Shown here in pieces: positions 11,185 to 53,570 of a stretch of DNA of 64,000 nt (its first letter is position 1; each line of letters starts with the position of its first letter). The position numbers and the translations under genes are program-made. The notes under the pieces were generated by a model, which saw only the letters and a list, made by a program, of their open reading frames with translations, searched no databases and was not told where the DNA came from. The stretch is taken from the IMG/VR virus record IMGVR_UViG_3300017991_000002, positions 1 through 64,000 of that record; one strand, given 5' to 3'.

Positions 11185-11660
11185 CAACAAAGTACCCACC
11201 TCATACCCCCTTTTACGTACCTTGATACGGTACTTGTTAGTATACAAGTTCCAACTTCTTTGTATACTGATAGGGTACTTCCCCTATATCAAGTTACATC
11301 TTCTTGAATATCGCACAAGAATGAAACCACACAGCAGACGATCAATCCTTCCCCAATTCAACATGTCGTACCCTCACATAGGACATACCCCCTATCAGTA
11401 CCCTATAAAGTACCCATACAGATACCCTACTTGTTAGTATACAAGTTCCAACTTCTTGGTATACTGATGGGGTACTTCCCCTATATCAAACACCAACTCG
11501 TCATTTTTTGAGGAAGATCCAGCCAAGATGACTCAAAATTCAACAACATAGTATACAGTATGGGTACTTCCTAGCATACAAGTGCTGACTTCCTGGTATA
11601 CAGATAGGGTACTTGTTGGTATACTGATAGGGTACTTCCCTTATATCAAGTTACATAAAT
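11185..11660. repeat. Iteron-like GGTACTT repeat region with a 62-bp direct repeat
   Basis: 11231-11292 and 11428-11489 match at 60/62; partial third copy at about 11609-11656; six GGTACTT plus inverted AGTACC copies. Confidence 0.85.
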
Positions 11661-11710
11661 AATAAATATCAGCACCATTCGTGTAAAAATTAGGGTTTAT
11701 TTTTCCCTTG

Positions 11711-11734
11711 CAAATACCCCTAAAGGGGTATTTG
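11711..11734. repeat. Perfect palindrome
   Basis: CAAATACCCCT-AA-AGGGGTATTTG (11-bp arms). Confidence 0.8.
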
Positions 11735-11752
11735 GGGAACAGGCGGTTGGAG

Positions 11753-11790
11753 ACAAAAAAAGCCCCCAAGGATTTCTCCCTGGGGGCCTA
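11753..11790 (-). terminator. Rho-independent terminator ending the early region
   Basis: Minus strand GCCCCCAGGG-AGAAA-TCCTTGGGGGC followed by T7. Confidence 0.8.
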
Positions 11791-11848
11791 GACCTTACGT
11801 TGGGTTGAACATGAAACCTACCGTTGGACTTATGCAACAATAGGGGAG

Positions 11849-11971
11849 TTATTCTTCTTGAATTCCTCGAGCAGCTTCATATTCAGCAAAAAGAATTCTT
11901 TCATTTTCTGCTGCTTCGAGTATCTCTCTTGCAATCTGTAATGCCTCAGCTCGTGATATAATAAGGGTCAT
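11849..11971 (-). CDS. Small acidic hypothetical protein (40 aa)
   Basis: Hand translation MTLIISRAEALQIAREILEAAENERILFAEYEAARGIQEE; starts 1 nt after the upstream stop. Confidence 0.6.
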   Translation of the reverse strand: MTLIISRAEALQIAREILEAAENERILFAEYEAARGIQEE

Positions 11972-11972
11972 A

Positions 11973-12176
11973 TTAAAAATCCATCAGGTCGATCGGATAG
12001 TTCTCCATCTCATATTTCTCGATAATGATAGCCAAGTGCTCGAGACGGTTCGCCTCATCAGTTCCCTCTTCGGGATCCAGATCAATAAGCGCCTCTATTT
12101 CTCTAAGGGCTTCTTCGTATTGCTCTTCTGTCTCTATCCTATCCATCTCTTCGGGCTCATAATGAATTCCTTCCAC
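11973..12176 (-). CDS. HigA antitoxin N-terminal-domain-only protein
   Basis: IETEEQYEEALREIEAL...EEGTDEANRLEHLAIIIEKYE..YPI resembles HigA N-terminal helices; no HTH. Confidence 0.65.
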   Translation of the reverse strand: MEGIHYEPEEMDRIETEEQYEEALREIEALIDLDPEEGTDEANRLEHLAIIIEKYEMENYPIDLMDF

Positions 12177-12210
12177 CTCATTGGTGCTCTCTCTCTCTTT
12201 CTATACCAGG

Positions 12211-12239
12211 ATTATAGCTTCTTGTCCTCCTGTTGTCAA
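12211..12239 (-). promoter_or_regulatory. Perfect sigma70 promoter
   Basis: TTGACA-17 nt-TATAAT on the minus strand upstream of 11973..12176. Confidence 0.85.
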
Positions 12240-12244
12240 GACAA

Positions 12245-12284
12245 GAAAAAACCCACCGTGGGTTTCTTCCCCGCGGTGGGTTAA
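12245..12284 (-). terminator. Rho-independent terminator
   Basis: CCCACCGCGGG-GAAGAAA-CCCACGGTGGG followed by T6. Confidence 0.8.
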
Positions 12285-12321
12285 TTAAGGAGATTTCTGA
12301 ACATCACCATTCAACACTTTT

Positions 12322-12350
12322 AATATAGGAACAGTGGTTCTGGTTGTCAA
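12322..12350 (-). promoter_or_regulatory. sigma70 promoter
   Basis: TTGACA-17 nt-TATATT on the minus strand. Confidence 0.7.
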
Positions 12351-12664
12351 GAATTCAATCGAAGTTTTCGATAACTTTCTCTCTTATTAAATGTGGGCCA
12401 GACGGTCGGTCTTGCCAGCTCTGCATCCTTGGGGTCTGTCGTGGACGTTGTTTGTGGGCGGAACATTTCCTGGGCTGCCTCCCAGCCGTTGTAGGCCATT
12501 ACCATTCGAACGAAGTAGTCGGGACGATCCTCGGGGAAAAAGTCTACTGGGGGGCCGAAGGAGTCCACCCACCAGGACACAAATTCCCGGGTAAAGACGA
12601 CGGACGGAAACCAGCTGGGAAGGTCCTCCGTGTTGAGCATTTCTTTCAGGGTTTCAGTGTTCAT
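12347..12664 (-). CDS. Hypothetical protein, RKLR-type tag
   Basis: Ends YRKLRLNS. Confidence 0.7.
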   Translation of the reverse strand: MNTETLKEMLNTEDLPSWFPSVVFTREFVSWWVDSFGPPVDFFPEDRPDYFVRMVMAYNGWEAAQEMFRPQTTSTTDPKDAELARPTVWPTFNKRESYRKLRLNS

Positions 12665-13020
12665 TTCTTCACCCTCAGCTTTCTGTAGAGCTTCACAGGT
12701 TTTCTTTCCTCCTGTTCCTCCATCTTCATCTTGAGTTCTTCATACTTCTGTTTCAGGGCATCTATTTGCCTTCGTAATACCTTCTGATCGATCTCATTCG
12801 CAGACTCTTCTGCGGCAGCCTGCGCCAATAACTCTTCCGCCTCGGGCCCGTGCAGATTAACCATGCGAGGTTCCAGAACAAATCGAGTTATGGCCTGCGA
12901 CTGGCTACGCCGTCGTTCTAGTTCCACCCGGCACTCGTAGCACACGGTCACCCCAACGATCATTTCAGGTTGGCTCAATGCACCGCCGCACTCGGAGCAG
13001 CTGTTCCCTTCCACACTCAT
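12661..13020 (-). CDS. C4 zinc-finger (TraR/DksA-like spacing) protein, tagged
   Basis: CSECG...VTVCYECR; ends YRKLRVKK. Confidence 0.65.
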   Translation of the reverse strand: MSVEGNSCSECGGALSQPEMIVGVTVCYECRVELERRRSQSQAITRFVLEPRMVNLHGPEAEELLAQAAAEESANEIDQKVLRRQIDALKQKYEELKMKMEEQEERKPVKLYRKLRVKK

Positions 13021-13319
13021 TTGAGCATCCTCAGCTTTCTTTTGTGAGGTAAGTTGTCTCTTATTGGTTCTACGGTCTTGGATGGGATCCCGCCGTTTCT
13101 GTACTTTCGCAGGCGTTCCAGGATATTCCTGAGTTCTTCATTGGCCGCTTGCTGACCCCAGGCCGCTGTATCCCCATGTTCAAGGAGTTCCTGGACAAGG
13201 CGCTCTCCTATCCTTATTCGATCGATTACCATCCTCTCGAACGCGGCGAGGTTGTACAGGTCCATCAATCCCCCCTCAATGTCTTCCATGATGCCAATTA
13301 TTCTTCCAAGCTCTAACAC
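13017..13319 (-). CDS. Hypothetical protein, tagged
   Basis: Ends KRKLRMLK. Confidence 0.7.
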   Translation of the reverse strand: MLELGRIIGIMEDIEGGLMDLYNLAAFERMVIDRIRIGERLVQELLEHGDTAAWGQQAANEELRNILERLRKYRNGGIPSKTVEPIRDNLPHKRKLRMLK

Positions 13320-13348
13320 CTTTTACGTTCTCCTACCTACTTCGTGAC

Positions 13349-13888
13349 TTATTCCAATCTTTCGAACACGGAAAAGATCCTAATTCGATTATTAAAGCCG
13401 CAGAGAACCCCTACCGCTGCTACGAACTTTGTTGACATTTCCTTCGGAGGGGAGGGAAGAATGTAGTGGATCATCCCAACCCTGCTTCCAGGCTCCACGG
13501 CATTGAGCATGTTCTTCAGCAATGCATTTGGCTTTGGGTAGGCCTCTCGTCCGACCTCGTAGTTCTCTGCATCCTCTGCACTGTATGGCGGGTCCGCCAG
13601 CATTGCCTTGAAGCCCGGGGGCAGCGGTTCCCTTGCATCCCGCAGGTAGTCTGGCCCGGTGGCCGGGTCGAGGTCTAGTGTTTTGTCCAGGGGACCAAAG
13701 CCCCCACGGTAAGGATAGTACCTCGCCATGCCGCCGCAGACATGGAGGACTGGGTCGTGGATGGATACCCCGAGCAATGCCCGGGCACGTTCTGGGAAGC
13801 CACCCAGGTAGGCACCGTAATACTTCCTACCGTCCTTCAACTTTGCCCGGGCAAGAATCCACATATCAGTTATTGGCCTGTAGCTCAT
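13349..13888 (-). CDS. Putative N6-adenine DNA methyltransferase
   Basis: VLHVCGG SAM-binding-like motif and LADPPY catalytic motif. Confidence 0.7.
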   Translation of the reverse strand: MSYRPITDMWILARAKLKDGRKYYGAYLGGFPERARALLGVSIHDPVLHVCGGMARYYPYRGGFGPLDKTLDLDPATGPDYLRDAREPLPPGFKAMLADPPYSAEDAENYEVGREAYPKPNALLKNMLNAVEPGSRVGMIHYILPSPPKEMSTKFVAAVGVLCGFNNRIRIFSVFERLE

Positions 13889-14169
13889 TTTGTCCTCCTT
13901 ACTCTCAACTTTCTATAAGGTTTGCAGGATTTTTTGGTCTTCTTGGACCGCAGGGGTCTTTCCTGCCGTTCATCATTCATCTCTTTCCTGAGCTCCCTTT
14001 TCATCGCCTCGTAAAAGCCAGCCATATCAGGCTCCTCCCCATAAAAATAGCGGCGGCAATTGGTACACATAGTCACCCCGGACGCCCGTTCGTACTCATT
14101 CAGATCGTCCCCGCACTCGGAGCACCGGTGGCTCTCCTCCTCGAACATCGTGTCGACTGCAATGCTCAT
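13885..14169 (-). CDS. C4 zinc-finger protein, tagged (paralog of 12661..13020)
   Basis: CSECG...GVTMCTNCR; ends YRKLRVRRTK. Confidence 0.65.
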   Translation of the reverse strand: MSIAVDTMFEEESHRCSECGDDLNEYERASGVTMCTNCRRYFYGEEPDMAGFYEAMKRELRKEMNDERQERPLRSKKTKKSCKPYRKLRVRRTK

Positions 14170-14471
14170 CGGTCCCCCATATTGAGTCTTCTTCCCGGAC
14201 GCCGGTGTTCTTCCTCACTCAGTTCAGGATGTTCAATTTCCTCCAGTTCTGAAAGGTCTATCCCAAACTCTTCCAGGAGCGGACAGTCCTCATAATTGCA
14301 CGGTGTGCGGGCATGTCTACATCGAGTAGTGTAGTTGGGATTCCTTGGCTGGGTCTCTAACTCTGCTGTAACATAGGTGGTATGTATGCCAACCGTTGCG
14401 TACGGACAAATCCCTTTGGAGTCAGCCATTCTTTCAACAAAATCAACAATCTTTCTTACATTCGGTTTCAT
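14166..14471 (-). CDS. Cys-rich hypothetical protein, tagged
   Basis: KGICPY..C..C..CPL; ends GRRLNMGDR; paralog of 35395..35628. Confidence 0.65.
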   Translation of the reverse strand: MKPNVRKIVDFVERMADSKGICPYATVGIHTTYVTAELETQPRNPNYTTRCRHARTPCNYEDCPLLEEFGIDLSELEEIEHPELSEEEHRRPGRRLNMGDR

Positions 14472-15031
14472 CTATTTAACCTCAGCTTTCTTTTGTAGTC
14501 CTTGGGCGCGGGGGTAGGAGTACAGAAGGTCCCTATTCTACGAAGGATTTCTTCAACTGCTGCTCGTACTCGTTCCTCCAACCGCTCTTGGGTATCCCTC
14601 AGGGAGGTTTCGAGGTCGAGGTCTTTTGATTCTCTTGTTCCCATGGATGTTGTCCACAGCCGGATTGCTCCATACCGGGTATAGGGAACCATTGGGACAA
14701 AGCGGACCCACGGGCTACGGCAGTTCGACGGGGTAGAGGACCGGGAGATTTGATCAATCTCATCGAGGAGTTCTGAGATAGTATCGTTACTGATCTCGAC
14801 ACAAAAGAGGTAGATCTTACCATCACTACCTTGGAATGCTGTATGTACCGCGATCACCGCTCCCAGAAACCTCTCGACGATGCTGTCGAGACTCTCAAAT
14901 TCCCTACACCTTCCTATGCAGGGACGTCGGTAGAAGCAATCGGACTGATGTCGCATATGGATTACAGTAAGGCCGGCTTCTCTCAAGGTATTAATAATGT
15001 TTGGGAGTCTTACCATTTTTGGGGTTTTCAT
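14468..15031 (-). CDS. Hypothetical protein, tagged
   Basis: Ends YKRKLRLNR. Confidence 0.7.
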   Translation of the reverse strand: MKTPKMVRLPNIINTLREAGLTVIHMRHQSDCFYRRPCIGRCREFESLDSIVERFLGAVIAVHTAFQGSDGKIYLFCVEISNDTISELLDEIDQISRSSTPSNCRSPWVRFVPMVPYTRYGAIRLWTTSMGTRESKDLDLETSLRDTQERLEERVRAAVEEILRRIGTFCTPTPAPKDYKRKLRLNR

Positions 15032-15549
15032 TTTCTTTCCCTTGTTTGAACGTTCAGTTTTCTTGTCAGCTTTGTTGGATTTTCAAGCTGGTGGATCCTT
15101 CTTCTTACCGTAATAAGATTGCGGGAGAGCAGATTGATCTCTTCTATGCAATGTTCATACGAAATGTACTCGGTTGTTGAGGGATACTTAAGGCATTCAT
15201 TCGCATCGTCTACCGCTTCCTTTAGCTTCTCAAGGATTTGGACTTCTTGAAGATATAACTCTTGCAGCCTTTTACTATTACCGAACGTCTTGCACGAGAG
15301 CTTATTGTTCCATCGACCCAATTGTCGGACCCGCTGCTCCAGTATTGCTTTCTTGCCTTCTTCACGGATAAGTTCCTCTCCCCAATTATTGAGGGTTTGC
15401 GGGGTTTCATTTTGTCGTGATTGCATAGGTTCTCCAGATCTTCCAGTCCCACAGTTTGCTTCCTGGTACCGGGCTAAAAATTGACGATACTTCTCGCACG
15501 TTCGATCGATTATTCGTGGGTAATATAAGTTCCTCATAATCGTTCCCAT
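15028..15549 (-). CDS. Coiled-coil hypothetical protein, tagged
   Basis: Ends TRKLNVQTRERK. Confidence 0.7.
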   Translation of the reverse strand: MGTIMRNLYYPRIIDRTCEKYRQFLARYQEANCGTGRSGEPMQSRQNETPQTLNNWGEELIREEGKKAILEQRVRQLGRWNNKLSCKTFGNSKRLQELYLQEVQILEKLKEAVDDANECLKYPSTTEYISYEHCIEEINLLSRNLITVRRRIHQLENPTKLTRKLNVQTRERK

Positions 15550-15626
15550 TATTTTTCCTTTTTAACGTTCAACGGGCCGCCTCTTTGACGTCGCGGACAA
15601 AACTTCCCATGCATACACTCCTTTGC

Positions 15627-15923
15627 TCATGCTCCTTGTCCTGTGTCTTCAATGCCCGGCAGGTGGGCATAAATATCAACCACTCCATCCATCACAACAT
15701 ACCTGCCGGCACCTAATCCCTCATGGGCGGCCCGTGCATCGAGTAGGTCTCTGAGGATTGAAATCTGCATAAGAGCATTGCTGGCCTCGATCCTTACAAT
15801 ATCATCATACTCGTAGTTAGCCTCAAGGATCTCCTGTGCCTCCTGAATCAGCCTTGCACAGGCCCTGAGTCGCTGCGCGCACCTTGTATGGTTAACTTTT
15901 TTCATGATCTTCCTCTTCCACAA
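15627..15923 (-). CDS. Hypothetical protein
   Basis: Tiles in the minus-strand operon. Confidence 0.6.
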   Translation of the reverse strand: MWKRKIMKKVNHTRCAQRLRACARLIQEAQEILEANYEYDDIVRIEASNALMQISILRDLLDARAAHEGLGAGRYVVMDGVVDIYAHLPGIEDTGQGA

Positions 15924-16134
15924 CTACCCACGAAAACATCATATCCAATCGCAGTGTATCACTCTTTGGGTTGTCGAGCAAGTCTACGAAACCTACCTCT
16001 TTCACAGCTTCCATCATTAAAAACACCAGCTCAGCTTCTGCTGCCAGACCCTGGAGTTTTCTGATCATGTTAATTTGTCCCACCGGTATCAATACTGTCA
16101 CTGGTTCTTTCTTATCACCTATCATTTTTGACAC
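15892..16134 (-). CDS. Hypothetical protein
   Basis: Tiles in the operon. Confidence 0.55.
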   Translation of the reverse strand: MSKMIGDKKEPVTVLIPVGQINMIRKLQGLAAEAELVFLMMEAVKEVGFVDLLDNPKSDTLRLDMMFSWVVVEEEDHEKS

Positions 16135-16546
16135 GTAGCCTCCTTACATACTTTGATGGCAGCTTGGGCTCTGGGCCTCTAGAGAGCTCATCAATCCTCT
16201 CAGCTATGCTCTTCTTGATCATTTTTAAATTATTGTACTCATTAAGTAGATTGACCTTCAAAGAGTACTCCAGACCAATCCGATCACGGGCGCTGACCTG
16301 ATCAATCCTCTCATACTTGTCAATAAGAGCATGAATTCTCCTGACAGAATCTCGTTGGGAGTTGTGAAGGATTGCAAGGATAAAATCATATGAAGCCTCT
16401 GATTTCTTTATCTCCTTTACAATATCTGCAACTGTAAAATCCAATTGAATTGTGCTCATATTTTCCTCCCCATCACCCGCCATGCCCAAAATGAAACTCA
16501 TGCACCAGCTGAGTTGGGTCATTGTCTTACCTGTTTGGACTAACAA
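16115..16546 (-). CDS. Hypothetical protein, tagged
   Basis: Ends VRRLRVKNDR; true start probably at the downstream MSTIQ. Confidence 0.6.
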   Translation of the reverse strand: MLVQTGKTMTQLSWCMSFILGMAGDGEENMSTIQLDFTVADIVKEIKKSEASYDFILAILHNSQRDSVRRIHALIDKYERIDQVSARDRIGLEYSLKVNLLNEYNNLKMIKKSIAERIDELSRGPEPKLPSKYVRRLRVKNDR

Positions 16547-16868
16547 TCTTCAACTTCCTCTTAAAGTCTACTGGTTGGGCTGGCTCCTTTTTCTCCCCAA
16601 ACTCTTGAATCCTCTTCCCGATGTTATGGTGAATATTTTCCAACTCCAGTCGACTGGCAACCATTATCGCTCTCAGTGCATGGAAGTCCCCAATCTCCCC
16701 GCTACGGCTACATTGTTTATATTCCCTGACTGCGGACTCTAATTTACAGGCCCAATAGTGTTGTTCATCAAACAGACTACTAAGATCCGGGTCAAAGAGT
16801 AAAGAACTCCTATCTTCACATAGTTTTACTGCCTCGTCAACTTCCCTCATAATGTTCATTATGATCAC
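16527..16868 (-). CDS. Hypothetical protein, tagged
   Basis: Ends FKRKLKIVSPNR. Confidence 0.65.
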   Translation of the reverse strand: MIIMNIMREVDEAVKLCEDRSSLLFDPDLSSLFDEQHYWACKLESAVREYKQCSRSGEIGDFHALRAIMVASRLELENIHHNIGKRIQEFGEKKEPAQPVDFKRKLKIVSPNR

Positions 16869-16883
16869 CTCTTTTTCGTATCT

Positions 16884-17044
16884 TCAGTCAGGGGACTTTC
16901 CATTAATACTCAAAGTCGGTCTTACCTTCAGCTTCCTGTGCTTGTATTTCCTGGTCTATCTTTCACTTTTATAATCCTTCCCGCCTCTTCGAGTAGGGAC
17001 ATATAGTCTTTGAGCTCAAGTGCCCTCTTATATGCCTTAAACAT
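16884..17044 (-). pseudogene. Frameshifted small tagged ORF
   Basis: MFKAYKRALELKDYMSLLEEAGRIIKVKDR, then one nt short of the frame encoding RKYKHRKLKVRPTLSINGKSPD. Confidence 0.45.
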
Positions 17045-17381
17045 TTGGCAACCTCAATCTTCTACAAGACGCCCTGGATTTTCTTGGCCTCTTACCAGCC
17101 TTCTCTAGTTCCCATTCCTTGGCCCGTTCCGAGGCCATGCGCTTGGTTTCCCTGCACAACTCTGCAATGTCCATAATTGTGTCAAGTCGATACTGAAGGA
17201 TAGGATCCGACGGGTTCCTTCCCGACCTCTCATATCGATTGGAAGCCCTCTCGATCTCTTCAATAAGATTTTTCCTCTCGTTGTCATACCATGAAAGAAG
17301 ATGAGCCAGCTCAGGATCAAATGTTCCAGCCATTGTAGCTTCCCGTATAATGTCTGCTGCTTCTTTTAATCGATCAGTCAT
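17037..17381 (-). CDS. Hypothetical protein, tagged
   Basis: Ends CRRLRLPNV. Confidence 0.7.
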   Translation of the reverse strand: MTDRLKEAADIIREATMAGTFDPELAHLLSWYDNERKNLIEEIERASNRYERSGRNPSDPILQYRLDTIMDIAELCRETKRMASERAKEWELEKAGKRPRKSRASCRRLRLPNV

Positions 17382-17404
17382 TCAGGACACCTGCTTTCAA
17401 CGCC

Positions 17405-17833
17405 TCACTCGTTTAATTCAGGAAAGAGGTGAGCCACTCTGCCGATAGAATCCCGACCCGAGTCCGGCATCCTTCCCTCCTCCAATGCCTTCTTCGTCTC
17501 CTCCGGGATAACCTTTATATCAATCGAGTCCACAAAAATATTGATCTCTGGAATTCCACTATCATTACCGGACACCGTTGTCTCCGGATCTTCCTGCACC
17601 ATGTAAAATACTGAACCGCTGGAAAACGGCTGCTTTGCAATCTCCTCAACTTGCCGCGGTACCGACAACTTCCCAAAGTCAAAAGAGCATTCCTTCGGTG
17701 GCCGGGGTTCCAGGAAGTTGCCAACGTAATTCAACTCCTCTTTAAAGTAGTCAAGGATCTCCTGTTCGGTCCCTGAAATTATCAAATCTTTTTTAATCGC
17801 CATAATTTTCCTTCCTTTCGGTTTTCGGGCCAT
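17405..17833 (-). CDS. Hypothetical protein
   Basis: Tiles in the operon. Confidence 0.6.
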   Translation of the reverse strand: MARKPKGRKIMAIKKDLIISGTEQEILDYFKEELNYVGNFLEPRPPKECSFDFGKLSVPRQVEEIAKQPFSSGSVFYMVQEDPETTVSGNDSGIPEINIFVDSIDIKVIPEETKKALEEGRMPDSGRDSIGRVAHLFPELNE

Positions 17834-17877
17834 TTATCAGGCCAAAATGGCCCACAAATGGCTCATTTGGGTCATTT

Positions 17878-18325: not shown

Positions 18326-18395
18326 GACCTTATCAGACTCACTACTGTGACAAATGATTTGGCTCGTCTGCTCATTTATTCCCCCTAAAAAATAA

Positions 18396-18857: not shown

Positions 18858-18859
18858 TG

Positions 18860-19042: not shown

Positions 19043-19043
19043 C

Positions 19044-19514: not shown

Positions 19515-19517
19515 GGT

Positions 19518-45943: not shown

Positions 45944-45955
45944 CGTATCTCCAAT

Positions 45956-46189: not shown

Positions 46190-46252
46190 CTTCTGAAATC
46201 CTCCTGATTTTTATCACTATTGGCCTATAATACCACAAATAAGCCTATCTTT

Positions 46253-46825: not shown

Positions 46826-46851
46826 AACAGCTCTCTCTTTCTAGAAGAACT

Positions 46852-47340
46852 TCACCGTGGGGTTCTTCTTACCCACCTATATGACAAAACCCTCTCTATC
46901 GGAAAGGGCATCACATTAAACTGGTTATTCTGATTTCCCCCCAGGATATAAACAAACTGCCTGCTTCCGTCAAGACCTATGAAAAGACCGACATGGCCAT
47001 AAGGGCTATCGGGAGAAATCCTCCACAAGACAACAACACAACCGAGGCGAGGCTCAGGAATATCAGTCCCCCATACCAACCAAGAACGAGCATTGGGGAG
47101 ACCTGTACCCCCACACCCGGACTCCCTCATAATTAAATTCAACGCAGCAGAGCACCAAGGAATCTCATCATTCGGCTCCATTCCTACAGACAGCAGATAT
47201 TCATCAATCTGAGGATTGCTCTCCGGTCCTGGTATCTCCGTTACCCCATAATGACGGAATGCCACTTCCAGCCAAGGAGGAACTATCAAAGATCTCATCG
47301 TCGTCACAATTTCCTTCCCCATACTTAACCAACGTCTCAT
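46852..47340 (-). CDS. TIGR02594-family NlpC/P60-like peptidoglycan hydrolase
   Basis: PWLEVA..EIPG..NPQI..DEIPWCSAALN..ARSWL..GHVGLF..LGGNQ. Confidence 0.85.
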   Translation of the reverse strand: MRRWLSMGKEIVTTMRSLIVPPWLEVAFRHYGVTEIPGPESNPQIDEYLLSVGMEPNDEIPWCSAALNLIMRESGCGGTGLPNARSWLVWGTDIPEPRLGCVVVLWRISPDSPYGHVGLFIGLDGSRQFVYILGGNQNNQFNVMPFPIERVLSYRWVRRTPR

Positions 47341-47479
47341 ACCACCACGTGTTCACATAAGTGGCCCCTCTGAAAGGCTGCCAGCCTTCTTGCAACAGGG
47401 CTCTGACCTTCTTACAAAGGTCATCGTCCCCTTCAGGACTGATAACAACTTTGTAATCAACTATCCGCTTCCTCATCAT
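47204..47479 (-). CDS. DUF1737-like small protein
   Basis: YKVV..LCKKVRALLQEGWQPFRG; overlaps the neighbouring gene. Confidence 0.5.
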   Translation of the reverse strand: MMRKRIVDYKVVISPEGDDDLCKKVRALLQEGWQPFRGATYVNTWWYETLVKYGEGNCDDDEIFDSSSLAGSGIPSLWGNGDTRTGEQSSD

Positions 47480-47612
47480 CCTTTTCTTCCCTCACCACCG
47501 CATCCTTAGGGGTCTTAAACTCCCGAATAGGCCTATCGCTCATTCTAAGGGTTGTGGGACCAGGTCTGACTTCATTAATTTTCATCATTTAATACCTCTC
47601 CCCTCAATCTCC

Positions 47613-48125
47613 CTATTGATGTGTCAGCACCTGAGCACCTATGCCATATTTTCCACTTTTCTTTCTATATTCATGTCCCCTCTCTCTCGATGCGGCAACC
47701 TTCATCGACTTAAGAAGTCCAGGCCGTTTCACTCCCTTGGTCCGTTTAATTGCCTTCTGCATGATCGGCTTCATTTCCTTTTTATATGCTGTCTTGAATT
47801 CACGCTTCAGTAGCTGTTTCCTCCTTTTGTGGGCTTCGGCAGCGGGCCAAACTGGCCTCGGATCATTTCTTCCCATCTTTTTACCTTGTAATTCAGTCCG
47901 CCAGTAATCTATATGGCGTCTGGCGTCTTCTTTTGCCCGCTTTCGAACCTCTGGATCCTTCATGCGTTCCCGCACCTTTTTACGTGCCCAAGCAAGTGCC
48001 TCTTTCTTACTCTTAAACTTGGCCTCTAATAGTTCATCAATCACGTCAGATGGAGGGTACCCATCGAGGACTGCTTCAATCATCTCTTGCGTTCTTGATA
48101 GTTCAAGTTTTTTGTCCATTCCCAT
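47613..48125 (-). CDS. Protein with acidic leader and very basic cargo
   Basis: IEAVLDGYPPSDVIDELLE-AKFKSK... Confidence 0.65.
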   Translation of the reverse strand: MGMDKKLELSRTQEMIEAVLDGYPPSDVIDELLEAKFKSKKEALAWARKKVRERMKDPEVRKRAKEDARRHIDYWRTELQGKKMGRNDPRPVWPAAEAHKRRKQLLKREFKTAYKKEMKPIMQKAIKRTKGVKRPGLLKSMKVAASRERGHEYRKKSGKYGIGAQVLTHQ

Positions 48126-48170
48126 ACTCCTGGTTCTGCCTTCCCTGGGAAGGTTACGTTTTCCCCGTAA

Positions 48171-48407
48171 TCAACTATCTTCTTTCTCATCTTCTCTTTC
48201 TTCCCTCACCACCACCTGCAACGCCTGCAACTGGGTCATGAAAGCTTCTACCTCTACCCACGGCTTTGTCTTAAGATAAGAGAACAGAGACCTCAGCAAT
48301 GCAGCAGGGATAATGAAATTTGTTTCATCCATCTTACTCATCTTCTCTCCCGAAGAATATTTCTTCAATCTTGTCCTCAAAAACTCCGACAGCATCTCCC
48401 CACTCAT
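48171..48407 (-). CDS. Hypothetical protein
   Basis: LFSYLKTKPWVEVEAFM; likely starts at MDETNF. Confidence 0.55.
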   Translation of the reverse strand: MSGEMLSEFLRTRLKKYSSGEKMSKMDETNFIIPAALLRSLFSYLKTKPWVEVEAFMTQLQALQVVVREEREDEKEDS

Positions 48408-49053
48408 CTTTATCGTCCATTACGGACGTTAAGTACCTGATACTGCCATAAAGCTTAATAGAGTCTTCGCCTCTTGCAATGATAAGGGTAAACATATTGA
48501 CCCCGAATTCATGCTCGGTGTTGAACACAATATCCTCGTCCTTATACAAGGCGTTAAGACTTTTCAATAACTTGCCCAAGGCGCTTCTCGCCTCATTTTT
48601 GTATTTCACTATCTTCTGATTAAACCATTCTTTCAGTTTAATCAACCCCTTCTTCATCCCAGCCACGACCCACTCAATACATAGGTCAATAATAATCGAG
48701 GCATAAGGTATTTGAGATGATATCCCTACCTTGGCCAAAATAACCGCAACGTTCGCAGCGGCCAGCAATTTCTTCAGGAACCCGCCAGACGCCAGATTAA
48801 CCAATGCTTCCGTGATCCCATGGCCAAACTCAACCCCCTTATCCTTGATAACGGCAATTATCTCTTCCTTGCTATGCTTGACTATACCATCATTGTTGAG
48901 ATCAACCTTTGATACGTTCTCCGCCACCAATACACAAATATCCCACAGATCCGACAGTATATTCGAACTTTGCCCCCTAAAAAAGGTCATAGCTGTGTTG
49001 ACAAATTCATCCTTACATTCCTGACCAGTGGTCAGGGAGATTGCTGTAGTCAT
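48334..49053 (-). CDS. Hypothetical protein
   Basis: 239 aa with a hydrophobic middle. Confidence 0.6.
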   Translation of the reverse strand: MTTAISLTTGQECKDEFVNTAMTFFRGQSSNILSDLWDICVLVAENVSKVDLNNDGIVKHSKEEIIAVIKDKGVEFGHGITEALVNLASGGFLKKLLAAANVAVILAKVGISSQIPYASIIIDLCIEWVVAGMKKGLIKLKEWFNQKIVKYKNEARSALGKLLKSLNALYKDEDIVFNTEHEFGVNMFTLIIARGEDSIKLYGSIRYLTSVMDDKDEWGDAVGVFEDKIEEIFFGREDE

Positions 49054-49745
49054 TTTCCTGACTCCTTCGATAGTATTTTTAGCTTGCGCCCTCGCAAATG
49101 ATCAGACGGGACAGTTCCTTTTGTCCTCAAGCTTCTGATACAATTATCGATGATTTTACGAAATGAGTCAAGTGAAATATCCTGATTCATGTAAGAATCT
49201 CTAAAAGGATACTTATACCACTGGATGCCAAATCCGGTTGGATTGTAATGAAAATTATCTTTCACCAGATAACAATCTGACTTATGACCTTCATGCCCAA
49301 AGATGACAGCATACTGCCGGATGATTACCTGCCTTCTCTCCTCAAGATCGCACGTACACTTCACTGCACAGCCATGCCACCAATCATCTCCTTCGGTGCT
49401 AAAACCATATTCACTATAAAGGATCCTCATTTGAGCGAGCCAATTTTCCACATGGGACAGGCCTCTAAAGGAGTCATCTATCCTCCTATACTTGGTGTGG
49501 AAACAATGTGCACGATGTGCAAGATCTTGATAAGACCGATGACCGTCATCAACATTATTCCAACCACACGTGCAGTCACCCCACCAATAAGGAAAAATCC
49601 AGAAAGTATCGTTCTCAAATTCATCTTGATAATCAATGCCGGTCACAGGCCACAGCCTTTGAAACTCCTCCTCCCAGCCCTTCCCCCGTGGAATTGATAT
49701 CTCCCCTCGAGAGTTCCCGAGGAGGACGTTTCCAAGATCCGTCAT
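49050..49745 (-). CDS. Cys/His-rich phage protein, tagged
   Basis: PYWWGDCTCG..FGIQWYKYPFRDSYMN; ends GRKLKILSKESGK. Confidence 0.7.
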   Translation of the reverse strand: MTDLGNVLLGNSRGEISIPRGKGWEEEFQRLWPVTGIDYQDEFENDTFWIFPYWWGDCTCGWNNVDDGHRSYQDLAHRAHCFHTKYRRIDDSFRGLSHVENWLAQMRILYSEYGFSTEGDDWWHGCAVKCTCDLEERRQVIIRQYAVIFGHEGHKSDCYLVKDNFHYNPTGFGIQWYKYPFRDSYMNQDISLDSFRKIIDNCIRSLRTKGTVPSDHLRGRKLKILSKESGK

Positions 49746-50296
49746 TTTCTGATCCTTAACTTTCGAAATAATTTTTTCTTTTTCCTTAGGAGTCCAGAAG
49801 TCATTTGCGGAGACATATGAAAGTTCTCAATAAAGGCGACATTGTCACTTGAAGGGGACATACTTATATTGACATTGAAAATATCCATATTCTCAACAAT
49901 ATTGGATTCGTTAACATTAACCGTTCCACAAATACTAAACCCAAACCGTGCTCCATTCCTCGCCATGGCAGTAATCTGGTCACCGCAGGGGGTATTAAGC
50001 ACCCGCACCGTACATCTTACCTTGCCGGAGACCTCCAGGACTAATTCTTCGACCCGATGAGATGTTCTGCAAAGAGGAAGAGTTCTAAAACCGGCCTCCT
50101 CCCCATGGGTAAAAGCCCCAAACTCCTCCCGCATTGAAGATACAGCCCTCTCCAGGACATCTCTCGGATACACACGACCGTTGCCATCGACCCTATCAGC
50201 TTCCAGATTCAGGTACCCTGTCAGTCGACCTTCCCTCTCGCTCATAAATAATCTTCCTCTCCTCACGACAAATCCCGGAGTGGCATATCGTCCCAT
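49742..50296 (-). CDS. Degenerate T4 gp21-like prohead protease, tagged
   Basis: NGRVYPRDVLERAV..TSHRV..VLNTPCG..GFSICG; ends FRKLRIRK. Confidence 0.65.
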   Translation of the reverse strand: MGRYATPGFVVRRGRLFMSEREGRLTGYLNLEADRVDGNGRVYPRDVLERAVSSMREEFGAFTHGEEAGFRTLPLCRTSHRVEELVLEVSGKVRCTVRVLNTPCGDQITAMARNGARFGFSICGTVNVNESNIVENMDIFNVNISMSPSSDNVAFIENFHMSPQMTSGLLRKKKKLFRKLRIRK

Positions 50297-50543
50297 ACTT
50301 CCTACAAATCAAAAAGGTAGCCCCCGGTAATGGGCCTTCACAGCAAGGACAGTGAACATCCGGAACGCACACCCTATCTTCCTTACAAGCAATCATCTGC
50401 CTGCGGAATGACCCATGCCTTACTTTATAATTAAGAAAACTCTCGCTCACAACATTCCTCCCCGACACTGGAAGGGCTTCCAGTGGAGCGATGGTTCTCC
50501 TCCCCCTCAGAAGAATGGAGCCGAAGCGTTCGTGAAATACCAT
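50196..50543 (-). CDS. Small Cys-rich protein (real start uncertain)
   Basis: CPCC..C..C..C in the C-half. Confidence 0.4.
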   Translation of the reverse strand: MVFHERFGSILLRGRRTIAPLEALPVSGRNVVSESFLNYKVRHGSFRRQMIACKEDRVCVPDVHCPCCEGPLPGATFLICRKYGTICHSGICREERKIIYEREGRSTDRVPESGS

Positions 50544-50946
50544 CCCTCCGTCTCTCTACCCTGAGCATACCATCATGTGGCACATCGCCATTCTCATCAA
50601 TACCCCAATAGGTCTCCATAAAATCAGCCAAAGCACAGGAAATAGAAACTGTACGACGTTCTAAATCTCCCATCGACTCAAGCCTTCTCATAAGAATATG
50701 GAGCTTTTCTTTCAGCCTCCTATGTTCAAACACCGCCCTATCCTTTTCTCTGATGACCTGATGTACCTTCTTTTGATGATCCCTGTGGGAATCAACTAAC
50801 AACCTTTCGGCATCTTTAGCCCTCATTTGATACAGTGTATAGTTCCCCTCAAAAAACTTCCTGGCGGCCCTTTGCTGTAAACCATACGATATGGACGCCG
50901 CGCTAACAGCGATCAGAAATACTACCAGAAAAGAAACCATTGGCAC
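50431..50946 (-). CDS. Membrane-anchored coiled-coil protein
   Basis: N-terminal TM helix. Confidence 0.55.
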   Translation of the reverse strand: MPMVSFLVVFLIAVSAASISYGLQQRAARKFFEGNYTLYQMRAKDAERLLVDSHRDHQKKVHQVIREKDRAVFEHRRLKEKLHILMRRLESMGDLERRTVSISCALADFMETYWGIDENGDVPHDGMLRVERRRDGISRTLRLHSSEGEENHRSTGSPSSVGEECCEREFS

Positions 50947-51370
50947 ACTCCTCTCTAGAATAAACAGGCCCTACTCTCAACTTCCTAACCGGCACTGTGA
51001 CCGATTGTAGCGCCGGTTCTGGTGTAATAACATTCCTGCCGGAGTTGAGGATAGTAACCACTTCGTCCTCCCCACGTGTTTCCCGCCGTTCAGGGTTTCG
51101 AGGTAACTGAAGTGACTCAAGCGACGGAACATACATCATCCCGAGTTTCATCTCCTCGTAAAGTACCTCCATAATGGATCCTTTTCTGAGAGGAGGAAAA
51201 AACAAAAGGAAATTGGAGTCTCTTACGAAATAAGGACCCTTATATGTACGACCATCTGGCAAATCCTTCCCATCAATGGTAATAACCACCTCCCCCTTAA
51301 TGGGAGAGGGTAACCACAACCTATCTACTTCCGCTGCGATTTCATACGTTATTAGTCTCAATTCCGACAT
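50903..51370 (-). CDS. Beta-rich structural-like fragment, tagged
   Basis: VVITIDG..Y..LLFFPPLRKGSIMEVLY; VRKLRVGP near the end. Confidence 0.55.
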   Translation of the reverse strand: MSELRLITYEIAAEVDRLWLPSPIKGEVVITIDGKDLPDGRTYKGPYFVRDSNFLLFFPPLRKGSIMEVLYEEMKLGMMYVPSLESLQLPRNPERRETRGEDEVVTILNSGRNVITPEPALQSVTVPVRKLRVGPVYSREECANGFFSGSISDRC

Positions 51371-52025
51371 TCTGCACCTTTAGCTTTCTTATACCGACCC
51401 CGGAAATCTTCATTTTTTCTATTCTTCCCTTCTCCAGAGTTTCCGCCTGTTTAATAATGTTCATTTCGTTTTTGGGGAGACAAATATCCACTCCAAGGAG
51501 TTCATATTCGGAGATGACCTTTACCTGATCAACCGCCCCAGCATACCCGTGAAGACTCGTCCTAAAAGGACAATTACCCAATAAAAGCCCCTGAAGTGTC
51601 CTGCTCCTCTCCGACAGGTCATCCACATTCATGTCGGCCATGACAATGTCCTCATCGTTAATCCAGAGCTTTACAAGGGTATGCGTTGTCGGTTCACGAT
51701 GCTCAGCCCGATGAGTATTGGATGTTTCAACATCAAAGATACAACACCTTGGATGTACATCTTCAACAACTTTTATAGCCTTCTCTATCTCTTCCCGGGG
51801 ATATATATACCCTGAAGAAGTAGGGGCACCAACTGGAATAACTCCGGCAGTTACAACAACTACTTTCCTCCCCTTCATGATATATTCCCAAATCTTCGGT
51901 TCTGGTATCTTCATAATAATACCTGCGCTTTCCTTAAATTCATGGGGCATTCTTTGAAGGGCCAGTAACATCGATAGACTGAGAGAAGGTAATGTTGCCC
52001 GCATTTCCCGAAATGATATTGACAT
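51342..52025 (-). CDS. Second degenerate gp21-like prohead protease, tagged
   Basis: SGYIYPREEIEKAI..THTLVKL..TSLHG..LLGVD; ends IRKLKVQNVGIETNNV. Confidence 0.5.
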   Translation of the reverse strand: MSISFREMRATLPSLSLSMLLALQRMPHEFKESAGIIMKIPEPKIWEYIMKGRKVVVVTAGVIPVGAPTSSGYIYPREEIEKAIKVVEDVHPRCCIFDVETSNTHRAEHREPTTHTLVKLWINDEDIVMADMNVDDLSERSRTLQGLLLGNCPFRTSLHGYAGAVDQVKVISEYELLGVDICLPKNEMNIIKQAETLEKGRIEKMKISGVGIRKLKVQNVGIETNNV

Positions 52026-52182
52026 ACAATGGTCTCCTTCTGAGGACTACCTTCCACAACCAGGGCCAAAATCGGACGTGGTATACCACATTGATCGTTA
52101 CCGGTTTATCCCAGCGGTTATTATACAAGGTAAATGGCCGATCCACAACAGTAAAGTTATCTGGTAAGTTTACCGGCATCAT
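51940..52182 (-). CDS. Hypothetical protein
   Basis: Overlapping start/stop with its neighbour. Confidence 0.45.
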   Translation of the reverse strand: MMPVNLPDNFTVVDRPFTLYNNRWDKPVTINVVYHVRFWPWLWKVVLRRRPLYVNIISGNAGNITFSQSIDVTGPSKNAP

Positions 52183-52397
52183 TTATTCCAAGTTTCGTCC
52201 TCGATCATATCGAGGAATTTATCACTCTCAACAACCTTAATCGGGATACCCCTGGCCATCTTCTTTATCTTCTTCAAACCCAAAGGTTCCTTTCCTGAGG
52301 CAACATTCGTTTCGACATAGGACTGATACCATCGTTTTCCCTTCTCATCAGGCGAAGACAAAATTCTCCTGACAGCTTTCTCTTTTCGTTCGCTCAT
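52179..52397 (-). CDS. Hypothetical protein
   Basis: Follows the promoter motif. Confidence 0.6.
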   Translation of the reverse strand: MSERKEKAVRRILSSPDEKGKRWYQSYVETNVASGKEPLGLKKIKKMARGIPIKVVESDKFLDMIEDETWNK

Positions 52398-52432
52398 CCT
52401 TTACCCCTTTCCTTGTTTTCTGTGTTATCTTC

Positions 52433-52475
52433 CTACTATACTTATACGTTTCTGAACAGAAAAAAGAAAAAGAAT
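52433..52475 (-). promoter_or_regulatory. Conserved phage promoter motif
   Basis: CAGAAACGTATAAGTATAGTAG with upstream T-tract. Confidence 0.75.
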
Positions 52476-52679
52476 TTACTGAGGAGAGGGAAAATTTCCG
52501 GTTATGATCCCTTCTGCGTAGTCTTGGATATTTGTTGTTCCTTTTCTTTTTCTACACTCTGTACAAATCCTAAAGGAAATTTGTCCTTCATCTGCAGAGA
52601 ATGTTTTAAATTCCCAAGTGTCTTCAATAAGGACTTTTCTCTGACAGGACTGACAGGTTACGAGGGTATTCAAGCTCAT
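52476..52679 (-). CDS. Small Zn-ribbon protein
   Basis: CQSCQ..ICTECR; AGGAGG RBS. Confidence 0.7.
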   Translation of the reverse strand: MSLNTLVTCQSCQRKVLIEDTWEFKTFSADEGQISFRICTECRKRKGTTNIQDYAEGIITGNFPSPQ

Positions 52680-52849
52680 CTTTTCCTCCTTTGAAAAAAT
52701 TGCGGTATCATTACTAATGACCCCAATTGTGATGAAGCTATTTCTTCAGTACATATTGTGGTCATATTAATGTGACAGAAATCGGGCACTTACTTTGAAC
52801 CAATCACTCTGTTTTATTATAGTATTTACATCAGGAGTATTCAAGGTAA

Positions 52850-53570
52850 TCTGTTTCAACAAAAGACTCTTTTTCTTTTGTTGAGCTGCCTCCTAAGTGG
52901 TCTTAAAAACGTGATGGCGCTATTACTTATAGCGTCGCAGAGGTAAAATCTGTGGATAACTCCAGAAACCTCTTCAGTCATATGAAGTTAACACGACTTT
53001 AGTTTCATTAAATAAACGTAAAAAAATAAAAAATAATCAAAAATAACGTAAAAACCCCCTTTTTCGCCTTTAAACGGTTATTTTTTATTTTTTCGGGGGG
53101 TATTTATTATTTATAGGGTATTTTCAACTTGTTGGGTATCTGTATAGGTACTTGTTAGTATACAAGTTCCAACTTCTTGGTATACCGATGGGGTACTTGT
53201 CGGATCCCAATGCCTCTAAATCTTGGGTCCTCAGATTCGACTTGACCCCTATCAAGTTCCGACTTTAGGGTAACCTGATATGGTACTTGTATGGTATCTG
53301 TATAGGTACTTCCCCGGGTAGTGATATGGTACTTGTATGGGGGAGGTGTAGGTACTTGTCGGTACTTCGGTGACATGTATGGTTTTTCGGGTCAAAAAGT
53401 CATCAAGTTCCGACTTTATGGCATGGGCAGGTATGGGCAGGTGTGGGCAGGTTTGGTACTGCCTAATGTGTATCAAGTATCAACAAGTTGACATTTGTAT
53501 GGGTACTTGTTGGTATACTGACTAGGTACTTGTCAGGTAGTTGATGGGGTACTTGTCTGGGAGGGTGTGA
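52850..53570. repeat. Origin-like intergenic region at the strand switch
   Basis: About ten GGTACTT; 50-bp copy of the 11.4-kb repeat (53149-53198); AT-rich 16-bp inverted repeat (53021-53036/53078-53093); DnaA-box-like TGTGGATAA at 52951. Confidence 0.75.

What the first reader, a model, noticed from the sequence alone, without database searches (positions are those of the whole stretch)
11185..53570. Two related GGTACTT/GTATAC repeat loci 42 kb apart bracket the whole early block
Seen: TACTTGTTAGTATACAAGTTCCAACTTCTTGGTATAC(T/C)GATGGGGTACTT at 11428-11477 and 53149-53198 (49/50 identical, direct orientation), with another copy at 11231. The core is an imperfect palindrome (AGTATACAAGTT-CC-AACT...GTATAC). 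Both loci hold many GGTACTT heptamers, and ATAAATAATAAATA (11656) appears inverted at 53101. Inference: duplicated origins or protein-binding iterons, or recombination sites able to excise or amplify the 41-kb accessory block.
Basis: partly seen in the sequence, partly recalled or inferred. Interest (0 to 1): 0.65.

Follow-up and report, generated by a model that had tools for sequence, protein, structure and literature searches.

The report
Paired iteron-like arrays in jumbo phage
The only two large gene-free gaps of a 205-kb uncultured phage genome are filled with the same phased GGTACTT repeat arrays, which look like protein-binding iterons of one or two replication origins (or a paired control region), not like recombination sites or an assembly error.

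Summary
The window is the first 64 kb of a circularly assembled 205-kb IMG/VR phage. GGTACTT is the most clustered 7-mer of the genome. 18 of its 37 copies lie in two ORF-free gaps, 11096-11972 and 52680-53782, which are the two largest non-coding gaps. A 50-nt module is 49/50 identical between the two gaps. Sites are phased at 23, 45 and 90-92 nt, mostly in direct orientation. Locus B also holds the most AT-rich 80 bp of the genome, a perfect 16-nt inverted repeat and one of only two perfect DnaA boxes. A 14-mer found only twice in the genome abuts both arrays. The only other metagenome hit to the double-unit pattern is a 4.5-kb Rep_3 plasmid with the layout iterons, AT-rich stretch, DnaA box. 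Best reading (about 0.45): iteron-type origin at locus B, with locus A as a second origin or an arrest/control site, as in SPP1 oriL/oriR. No initiator was found. The main rival is a pair of operator arrays at the early-block boundaries. Excision or amplification is not supported: there is no recombinase and no junction contig, and flank depths are equal (36 vs 33). The GC-skew minimum follows the coding strand, so it is not independent evidence. No relative carries the loci.

The parts
11096..11972 (.). Locus A: second-largest ORF-free gap of the genome. It lies between the start of the leftward 542-aa gene (11095) and the last gene of the small-ORF block.
11174..11196 (-). Inverted iteron-like unit (GGTACTTTGTTGGACATTGATGA on the minus strand). 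It overlaps the -35 of a weak sigma70-like promoter (11177..11148) for the 542-aa gene.
   Evidence: PWM score 13.8; promoter scan
11224..11292 (+). 69-nt module, copy 1, with GGTACTT at 11229 and 11274.
11390..11425 (-). Inverted units (12-nt tandem CCCTATACAGTA x3.4; AAGTACC at 11408) placed head-to-head with module copy 2.
   Evidence: (I6, I7, I13)
11421..11489 (+). 69-nt module, copy 2. Its 11428-11477 stretch is 49/50 identical to 53149-53198.
11558..11649 (+). Degenerate module copies, with the best 23-nt unit GGTACTTGTTGGTATACTGATAG at 11608. GGTACTT at 11563, 11608 and 11631.
11655..11668 (+). AT-rich 14-mer ATAAATAATAAATA, one of only two copies in the genome.
11760..11789 (-). Strong intrinsic terminator (13-bp stem, 8 GC pairs, T-run) that closes the leftward small-ORF block.
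11973..52679 (-). Bracketed block of about 100 small minus-strand ORFs. Recognisable genes: RNA ligase 26411-27520, Ant-like 19949-20935, ATPase 24320-25777, methyltransferase-like 13349-13888, weak prohead-protease-like 49742-50296. Five copies of a phage promoter motif.
52680..53782 (.). Locus B: largest ORF-free gap of the genome, at the divergence point of leftward and rightward genes.
52816..52844 (-). Sigma70-like promoter TTGAAT-17-TATAAT (10/12) facing the leftward block.
52951..52959 (-). Perfect DnaA box TTATCCACA, one of two in 205 kb.
53011..53114 (.). Most AT-rich stretch of the genome (79% over 80 bp). It contains a perfect 16-nt inverted repeat (53021-53036 / 53078-53093) and the inverted 14-mer at 53101-53114.
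53121..53373 (+). Array of about 11 units in a 23-nt register. It includes the 50-nt shared module (53149-53198) and four consecutive GGTACTT sites at exactly 23 nt (53282-53357).
53423..53456 (+). 10-nt tandem repeat ATGGGCAGGT x3.4 between the two sub-arrays.
53489..53575 (+). Second phased sub-array, with GGTACTT at 53502, 53525 and 53548.
53783..54511 (+). First rightward gene: a 242-aa multi-HTH protein (N-terminal three-helix HTH plus two 45-aa beta-beta-alpha3 modules). It is a candidate binder only.

Best explanation
The two loci are arrays of double-stranded-DNA binding sites (iterons) for one sequence-specific protein. The core is GGTACTT(G/C)(T/C), repeated every 23 bp or a multiple of it.

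Locus B (52.7-53.8 kb) is most likely the phage's replication origin. Its layout is DnaA box, then the most easily melted AT-rich element of the genome, then about 15 phased iterons, then the first rightward gene. An initiator bound to the array would open the AT-rich element, so that the phage's own DnaB-like helicase, primase and PolA (97-104 kb) can load.

Locus A (11.1-11.97 kb) carries the same sites plus the same AT-rich 14-mer. It would act as a second origin, or as a distant partner that binds the same protein. That partner role could be fork arrest or replication-mode switching as proposed for SPP1 oriR, or pairing ('handcuffing') with locus B.

Shown: the sites, their phasing, their uniqueness and their surroundings. 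Inferred: protein binding, the identity of the binder, and any replication activity.
For: 1. Clustering and uniqueness. GGTACTT occurs 26 times against 5.3 expected. 18 of 37 genome copies lie in the two loci. It is the top clustered 7-mer of the genome.
2. Binding-site signature. Information content is concentrated in 9 of 23 positions while the spacers vary. The 23-nt register is kept over about 250 bp. Spacings are 23/45/90-92 nt.
3. Origin-type surroundings at locus B: the most AT-rich 80-bp window of 205 kb, a perfect 16-nt inverted repeat, and a perfect DnaA box. About 1.6 perfect boxes are expected per genome, so about 0.01 in this gap.
4. A 14-mer present only twice in the genome flanks both arrays.
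5. These are the two largest non-coding gaps of a tightly packed genome.
6. The double-unit pattern, scanned over all metagenome contigs, hit only this genome and L128. L128 is a 4.5-kb plasmid with 22-bp iterons CGTACTTTTTGGTATACTTCTT, 17/22 identical to the best phage unit. Its layout is rep gene, iterons, AT-rich stretch, perfect DnaA box, with a Rep_3 initiator (Rep3_N E = 3.8e-37). Locus A has the same order: leftward gene, iterons, AT-rich.
7. The phage has its own replisome and so needs an origin.
8. Known precedent: SPP1 has two origins, each with direct repeats plus an AT-rich DUE, both bound by one protein (PMC6316719).
Against: - No initiator was found. There is no Rep_3 domain and no homologue of the L128 Rep in six frames.
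- The neighbouring 542-aa protein is an ORFan with no usable model.
- gp53783 looks like the DNA-binding part of homing endonucleases. Its homologues elsewhere sit in tight gene arrays without repeat-filled gaps.
- The GC-skew minimum at locus B follows the coding strand: a reverse-oriented gene at 125.5 kb has reversed skew. It is therefore not independent evidence.
- One DnaA box may be chance.
- The L128 resemblance was found with a pattern built from the phage unit. Given the many 22-bp iteron arrays in nature, my rough estimate is that such a hit has an expectation of order 0.01-1.
- No relative of the phage carrying these loci was found, so conservation could not be tested.
- Both loci also sit at operon boundaries, which suits a transcriptional role equally well.
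Confidence: 0.45

Rival explanations
1. Operator arrays of a phage transcription regulator, marking the two ends of the leftward small-gene block. Locus B lies at the divergent promoters. Locus A lies between the block's terminator and the promoter of the next (structural-looking) operon. The same protein bound at both could switch early and late expression, possibly by looping, in the manner of lambda oL/oR.
For: - Both loci lie exactly at operon boundaries.
- An inverted unit overlaps the -35 of the predicted promoter of the 542-aa gene.
- The shared module contains a short operator-like palindrome, ACTTGT-N6-ACAAGT.
- GTATAC motifs 23 nt apart score as TATACA-N16/17-(TG)TATACT promoter-like sites at 11241, 11438 and 11597.
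- A multi-HTH protein gene follows locus B.
Against: - Sixteen or more same-orientation sites phased over 250-450 bp is far more than known operators need.
- Promoter-like hits are only 9/12 and follow automatically from the 23-nt period. The locus B copy fails the scan.
- The plus-strand promoter-like sites at locus A would point antisense into the block.
- A distinct, well-conserved promoter motif already serves both arms and is unrelated to GGTACTT.
- This reading does not explain the extreme AT-rich element, the DnaA box or the plasmid-origin resemblance.
Confidence: 0.28
2. Cis sites for DNA handling other than replication initiation. Candidates are a T5-like injection-stop or entry signal, a packaging or synapsis site for terminase, a centromere, or an anchoring site for a nucleoid or compartment protein.
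For: - The T5 iss is a large untranslated region full of repeats, palindromes and DnaA boxes at the edge of the first-injected pre-early block (bioRxiv 10.1101/866236).
- The arrays bracket an early-looking block.
- The sub-period of 11-12 nt resembles centromeres such as parC, which is my own recollection and was not tested here.
Against: - No ParA or ParB in six frames.
- Depth is equal inside and outside the block, so the block is not a collapsed long terminal repeat.
- The map is circular and the terminase and portal are T4-like, which suggests headful packaging without fixed ends.
- The loci are 60 kb from the terminase genes.
Confidence: 0.12
3. Recombination sites, either site-specific or 50-bp homology, that excise, delete or amplify the 41.7-kb block.
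For: - Direct orientation and a 49/50 identical 50-nt module.
- Phages with active recombination can delete between such repeats. T4 gene 17 amplification between short homologies is a precedent, cited from my own knowledge.
Against: - No tyrosine or serine recombinase in the genome.
- No recombinant joint in the contigs of the source run.
- Loose ends at 11229 and 11637 read straight into locus B sequence.
- Depth is 36.3 outside and 33.4 inside the block, and shared 31-37-mers sit at about 2x, as expected for two copies.
- A recombination role does not explain 16 or more phased sites.
Confidence: 0.04
4. Functionless remnants of a duplicated intergenic segment.
For: One module is nearly identical between the loci, as after a recent duplication or gene conversion.
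Against: - The heptamer is kept in every unit while the spacers diverge to 40-60% identity.
- The phase is kept.
- The genome is otherwise compact, with the next largest gaps at 300 bp or less.
Confidence: 0.05

Closest known systems
Bacillus phage SPP1 oriL / oriR
   Same: Two loci in one phage genome, kilobases apart. Each is built of direct repeats plus an AT-rich unwinding element. One is intergenic and lies between transcription signals. Both are bound by a single origin-binding protein. The second locus is proposed to stall forks and trigger the theta-to-sigma switch (PMC6316719).
   Different: SPP1 is 44 kb and its loci lie about 13 kb apart on the circle. oriL lies inside the initiator gene 38. 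Here both loci are intergenic, 42 kb apart in a 205-kb genome, have many more sites, and have no recognised initiator. A gp38 homologue was not looked for specifically.
Iteron origins of Rep_3 theta plasmids (example found here: L128, ERZ808277 NODE_1925, 4.5 kb)
   Same: Direct repeats of 22-23 bp with the shared core GTACTTnTTGGTATACT (17/22 identical). An adjacent AT-rich region and a perfect DnaA box. A gene starting next to the array.
   Different: The phage has no Rep_3 protein. Its units are much less uniform, with only a 7-9-nt conserved core. There are two loci. Relative to the AT-rich element, the iteron orientation at locus B is opposite to that of the plasmid.
P1 incC/incA, P4 ori/crr and R6K distant iteron sets (my own knowledge, not tested here)
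   Same: One initiator binds two separated sets of related repeats. The second set controls or assists the origin by pairing or looping.
   Different: Those sets lie 1-5 kb apart and flank or neighbour the initiator gene. Here 42 kb of unrelated genes lie between them.
Lambda oL / oR operator clusters (my own knowledge)
   Same: Two related site clusters bracket a gene block at divergent early promoters and can interact at a distance.
   Different: Lambda has three 17-bp palindromic operators per cluster, 2.4 kb apart. Here there are 8-15 same-orientation short sites per cluster in helical phase.
T5 injection stop signal region
   Same: A large untranslated, repeat- and palindrome-rich region with DnaA boxes at the border of the first-expressed block (10.1101/866236).
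   Different: The T5 iss lies in a 10-kb terminal repeat and has eight DnaA boxes. Here the map is circular, there is no depth step, and there is one DnaA box.

Membership tests
Iteron-type replication origin (plasmid/phage theta origins) | Several direct repeats of about 17-23 bp in helical phase | tested here: met
   23-nt register over 53121-53373 and 53489-53575. Spacings are 23/45/90-92 nt at both loci. The core is conserved and the spacers vary.
Iteron-type replication origin (plasmid/phage theta origins) | Adjacent AT-rich DNA unwinding element | tested here: met
   Locus B: 53011-53114 is the most AT-rich 80-bp window of the genome and holds a 16-nt perfect inverted repeat. Locus A has only a short AT-rich stretch with the shared 14-mer.
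Iteron-type replication origin (plasmid/phage theta origins) | Host DnaA box(es) beside the iterons (common, not universal) | tested here: inconclusive
   One perfect box at 52951, one of two in the genome. None within one mismatch at locus A. A single box could be chance.
Iteron-type replication origin (plasmid/phage theta origins) | Cognate initiator (Rep_3 or other iteron-binding protein) encoded nearby | tested here: not met
   No Rep3_N in six frames. No homologue of the L128 Rep. The neighbours are an ORFan and a multi-HTH protein of unproven role.
Iteron-type replication origin (plasmid/phage theta origins) | Replication actually starts there | not testable with these tools
   Only contigs of one DNA run were available. 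GC skew is confounded by gene orientation.
Site-specific recombination sites (att/res-type) | A recombinase encoded by the element | tested here: not met
   No Phage_integrase and no Resolvase domain in six frames. Controls rang in 13-14 of 14 genomes.
Site-specific recombination sites (att/res-type) | Recombinant junctions or copy-number change of the bracketed block | tested here: not met
   No 11.4/53.2 joint. Depth is 36.3 vs 33.4. This is contig-level data only, so rare events are not excluded.
ParABS-type centromere | ParA ATPase and ParB-type binder | tested here: not met
   No AAA_31 and no ParB_N matches. ParM and TubZ types were not searched.
Boundaries of a long terminal repeat (T5/SPO1 style) | Two-fold read depth across the repeated block in a collapsed assembly | tested here: not met
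   A 12.4-kb contig inside the block has depth 33.4. The 89-kb contig outside it has depth 36.3.
Sigma70-type promoters | -35/-10 hexamers at 16-18 nt | tested here: inconclusive
   9/12 matches at 11241, 11438 and 11597 (+), which follow from the GTATAC period. There are 6 sites against 2.8 expected at locus A. The arrays of locus B have none.
Known RNA families | Match to an Rfam model, or a stable fold | tested here: not met
   No Rfam hit in the window and no tRNA. Folding z-scores are only -0.4 to -2.6.

The most novel reading that the evidence does not exclude
A T4-like-packaging jumbo phage with an SPO1-like replisome uses two distant arrays bound by one still unknown, non-Rep_3 protein. 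The protein starts replication at locus B. By pairing with or stalling forks at locus A, 42 kb away, it loops out or silences the whole early block and switches replication mode. This would be a combined origin and insulator system with a new class of initiator.
Probability: 0.1. Interest if true: 0.75.

Novelty: new variant of a known kind. Interest (0 to 1): 0.45.

Why it matters
Origins and their initiators are unknown for almost all jumbo and uncultured phages. Here a 205-kb genome, most of whose genes have no relatives, offers two short, sharply defined and easily synthesised candidate cis elements. They share a simple site (GGTACTT every 23 bp) that can be used as bait to fish out the binding protein. 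If the two loci work together across 42 kb, they would be a compact model for long-range control of a phage's early gene block. If they turn out to be plain operators or one origin plus a copy, the finding is a useful annotation but not a surprise.

Tried and rejected
- Relatives by DNA. No blastn match of locus A (with flanks), locus B or either array in the phage or plasmid collections.
- Relatives by flanking proteins. None in IMG/VR. The word search found only the genome itself, plus module-level hits.
- Iteron 17-mer in IMG/VR: ten single chance hits, none clustered.
- Promoter 19-mer in IMG/VR: nothing.
- TerL relatives. Best 68% (5.9-kb contig), then 53% (54-kb contig that cannot reach the locus), and 36% or less in IMG/VR.
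- Two distant relatives were fetched whole (G001, G005). They have no comparable arrays. G001 has an unrelated pentamer array.
- GC skew as origin evidence: rejected, because it follows the coding strand.
- Collapsed 42-kb terminal repeat or amplification: rejected by equal contig depth.
- Recombinases, ParA, ParB, Rep_3: absent.
- gp53783 fold. pLDDT is 65 and there is no significant PDB match. The Atlas gives only HTH and homing-endonuclease leads.
- Big protein search on gp53783. It showed a widespread 45-aa tandem module rather than an initiator family. Three homologue contexts had no repeat-filled gaps.
- 542-aa neighbour: no family, no Atlas lead. PF18823, carried by its weak hits, is absent from the genome.
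- Structured RNA or ssDNA: no Rfam hit and weak folds.
- RNA-seq runs: none hold the stretch.
- Genome-contig scan: only an AT-rich Clostridia MAG region with GTATAC arrays, judged a composition-level resemblance.
- GTAC avoidance: mild (388 against 567 expected) and not explanatory.

Full report
**What the window is.** The window is bases 1-64000 of a 205,367-bp IMG/VR virus record. Its 123-bp 'terminal repeat' is an exact end overlap. The same genome was assembled by JGI (205,369 bp) and by ENA/MEGAHIT k141 (205,387 bp) with different rotations. Both are letter-identical to the window over 6967-13595. The map is therefore circular and the contig ends are arbitrary.

The genome has three parts.
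- A rightward arm, 53-136 kb. It carries a helicase, a DnaB-like helicase, a primase, a family A polymerase, SbcCD, a large terminase and a T4-type portal.
- A leftward arm of large genes, 136-205 kb continuing into 1-11 kb.
- A leftward block of about 100 small ORFs at 12-53 kb.

The nearest cultured phages share only 26-28% polymerase identity. The best uncultured terminase relatives are 68% and 53% identical and sit on short contigs.

**The observation.**
- A 69-nt family has copies at 11224, 11421 and 53142, and degenerate copies at 11558 and 11581.
- 11428-11477 and 53149-53198 are 49/50 identical and direct.
- GGTACTT occurs 26 times in the window against 5.3 expected.
- In the whole genome there are 37 copies: 8 fall in kb 11 and 10 in kb 53, and nowhere else is there a cluster.
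- A blind scan of all 7-mers ranks GGTACTT as the most clustered word of the genome.
- The 14-mer ATAAATAATAAATA occurs exactly twice, at 11655 (+) and 53101 (-), each next to an array.
- Both loci are ORF-free. They are the two largest non-coding gaps of the genome, about 0.9 and 1.1 kb. The next largest is about 300 bp.

**Anatomy of the arrays.**
- Conserved core. Only GGTACTT plus about two following bases and a G at position 12 is conserved. The rest of each unit varies.
- Phasing. Sites are phased at 23 nt or multiples of it. Locus B has four consecutive sites at exactly 23 nt, two sub-arrays in a 23-nt register (53121-53373 and 53489-53575), and other spacings of 45 and 90 nt. Locus A has spacings of 45, 92, 45 and 23 nt.
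- Sub-period. An 11-12-nt sub-period (GGTA...GGTA) is visible.
- Orientation. Locus B is entirely in one orientation. In locus A each direct module is preceded by inverted units (11174-11196 and 11390-11425). One of these overlaps the -35 of a weak promoter for the 542-aa gene.
- Shared module. It holds the short palindromes ACTTGT-N6-ACAAGT and AAGTT-CC-AACTT. Folding as a single strand is barely better than shuffles. No RNA family matches.

Taken together, this is the signature of double-stranded protein-binding sites under selection, not of a decaying duplication.

**Surroundings.**
- Locus B, reading left to right: a sigma70-like promoter facing left (52816-52844); a perfect DnaA box at 52951, one of two in 205 kb; the most AT-rich 80 bp of the genome (53011 onward), with a perfect 16-nt inverted repeat; the arrays; and the first rightward gene at 53783.
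- Locus A, reading left to right: the start of the leftward 542-aa gene, the arrays, the AT-rich 14-mer, and a strong terminator that ends the small-ORF block.

**An outside comparator.** The pattern ACTTNTTRGTATAC-N8-ACTTNTTNGTATAC was scanned over all metagenome contigs. It hit only this genome and one 4.5-kb contig, L128. L128 looks circular and has 27% GC. It carries at least four 22-bp iterons, CGTACTTTTTGGTATACTTCTT, which are 17/22 identical to the best phage unit. Next come an AT-rich region and a perfect DnaA box. A Rep_3 initiator gene starts beside the iterons (Rep3_N 3.8e-37, Rep3_C 2.7e-15), and there is a resolvase.

This is a textbook iteron origin. Locus A has the same order (leftward gene, iterons, AT-rich) and locus B has the same parts. 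The hit was found with a pattern built from the phage unit, and 22-bp iteron arrays are common. I therefore treat it as a functional analogy, not as proof of homology. The phage has no Rep_3 and no relative of that Rep.

- Excision or amplification. No tyrosine or serine recombinase is encoded. Only one public run holds the stretch. It is probably the source sample and is kept as contigs. Laid on 10000-13000, its contigs break inside the repeats, as a k=31 assembler must. Every loose end reads into locus B. Shared 31-37-mers have about twice the flank depth. The 89-kb contig outside the block and the 12.4-kb contig inside it have depths of 36.3 and 33.4. So there is no junction and no copy-number step, which also rules out a collapsed 42-kb terminal repeat. 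Contigs cannot exclude rare events.
- GC skew. The cumulative minimum is at 52-53 kb and the maximum at 135 kb. However, a reverse-oriented gene at 125.5-126.9 kb has reversed skew. The skew therefore follows the coding strand and says nothing independent about replication.
- Partition. No ParA or ParB.

**The candidate binder.**
- gp53783 has an N-terminal three-helix HTH and two copies of a 45-aa module, AFGExKTxxxWSxDPR...GW..EEAL. The next ORF carries a third copy.
- The fold search gave no significant match. Atlas leads are viral HTH proteins and DNA-binding parts of homing endonucleases.
- The exhaustive search found the module in 1543 representative proteins, with up to 28 tandem copies. 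Three homologue contexts are tight small-gene arrays without repeat gaps.
- gp53783 is therefore a reasonable EMSA candidate but not an identified initiator.
- The 542-aa neighbour of locus A is an ORFan.

**Verdict.** The loci are paired iteron-like binding arrays.
- The most likely role (about 0.45) is an origin at locus B, with locus A as a second origin or a distant partner site. This matches the SPP1 oriL/oriR arrangement (PMC6316719).
- The main rival (about 0.28) is a pair of operator arrays at the two ends of the early-looking block.
- Other DNA-handling signals, such as a T5-iss-like stop (10.1101/866236), are possible but less supported.
- Recombination and artefact readings are weak.
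- No relative carrying these loci was found, so conservation could not be tested.

Noticed in passing
window 23840, 36042, 41697, 45208, 52433 (-); 58346 (+); genome 95711, 117834, 127378 (+): A roughly 40-nt conserved promoter-like motif, TTTTTCTTTTTTC-N-CAGAAACGTATAAGTATAGTAG, often followed by a ribosome-binding site. There are 9 copies, always in gene orientation. They occur only in the 12-53 kb block and the 53-128 kb arm, and none in the large-gene arm. This looks like a phage-specific early/middle promoter class.
   Followed up: partly
window 58830-59993, 60027-60755, 60812-61375: An ATPase gene (phrog_8638, profile positions 29-372 and 372-554) is split in two by an HNH endonuclease gene. 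This may be an intron, an intervening element or a split gene. No Rfam group I intron hit.
   Followed up: no
window 53783-54744; proteins P0025, P0026: The 45-aa module of gp53783 (AFGExKTxxxWSxDPRCxVSY..L..RL..GW..E.AL..P) has no Pfam hit for this protein. It occurs in 1543 representative proteins, up to 28 tandem copies in a 1537-aa protein. It is a little-described tandem DNA-binding-like repeat family.
   Followed up: partly
L128 (ERZ808277 NODE_1925, 4537 bp): A small AT-rich Rep_3 plasmid with resolvase. Its 22-bp iterons share the core GTACTTnTTGGTATACT with the phage arrays.
   Followed up: yes
G001 (IMGVR_UViG_3300035099_000047) 48500-49070: A distant terminase relative (35%) carries about 110 tandem pentamers (GTCNN)n, all on one strand. 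These are unrelated to the GGTACTT arrays and their role is unknown.
   Followed up: no
L130 (Clostridia MAG CAXXGX010000025.1) 4130-4430: An AT-rich stretch with dense GTATAC arrays and a 33-nt tandem repeat x4. There is no ORF of 80 aa or more in the 4.5-kb locus.
   Followed up: no
window 49742-50296 (-): A weak match to the T4 gp21-type prohead protease (phrog_207 8.6e-11; Pfam Peptidase_S77 below cut-off) inside the supposedly early block.
   Followed up: no
window 53423-53456: The 10-nt tandem repeat ATGGGCAGGT x3.4 lies between the two sub-arrays of locus B. It may be a second kind of site.
   Followed up: no
window 11711-11734: A perfect 11-nt inverted repeat, CAAATACCCCT / AGGGGTATTTG, with a 2-nt loop. 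It lies between the AT-rich 14-mer and the terminator at locus A.
   Followed up: no
window 12660-50993, many gene junctions (families D5-D7, D10): A recurrent motif, AGAAAGTTGAGG on the coding strand, lies just before start codons that overlap the previous stop. This is a conserved translation-initiation context in the small-ORF block.
   Followed up: no
whole genome: GTAC is mildly under-represented (388 against 567 expected), although it is part of the array core.
   Followed up: no
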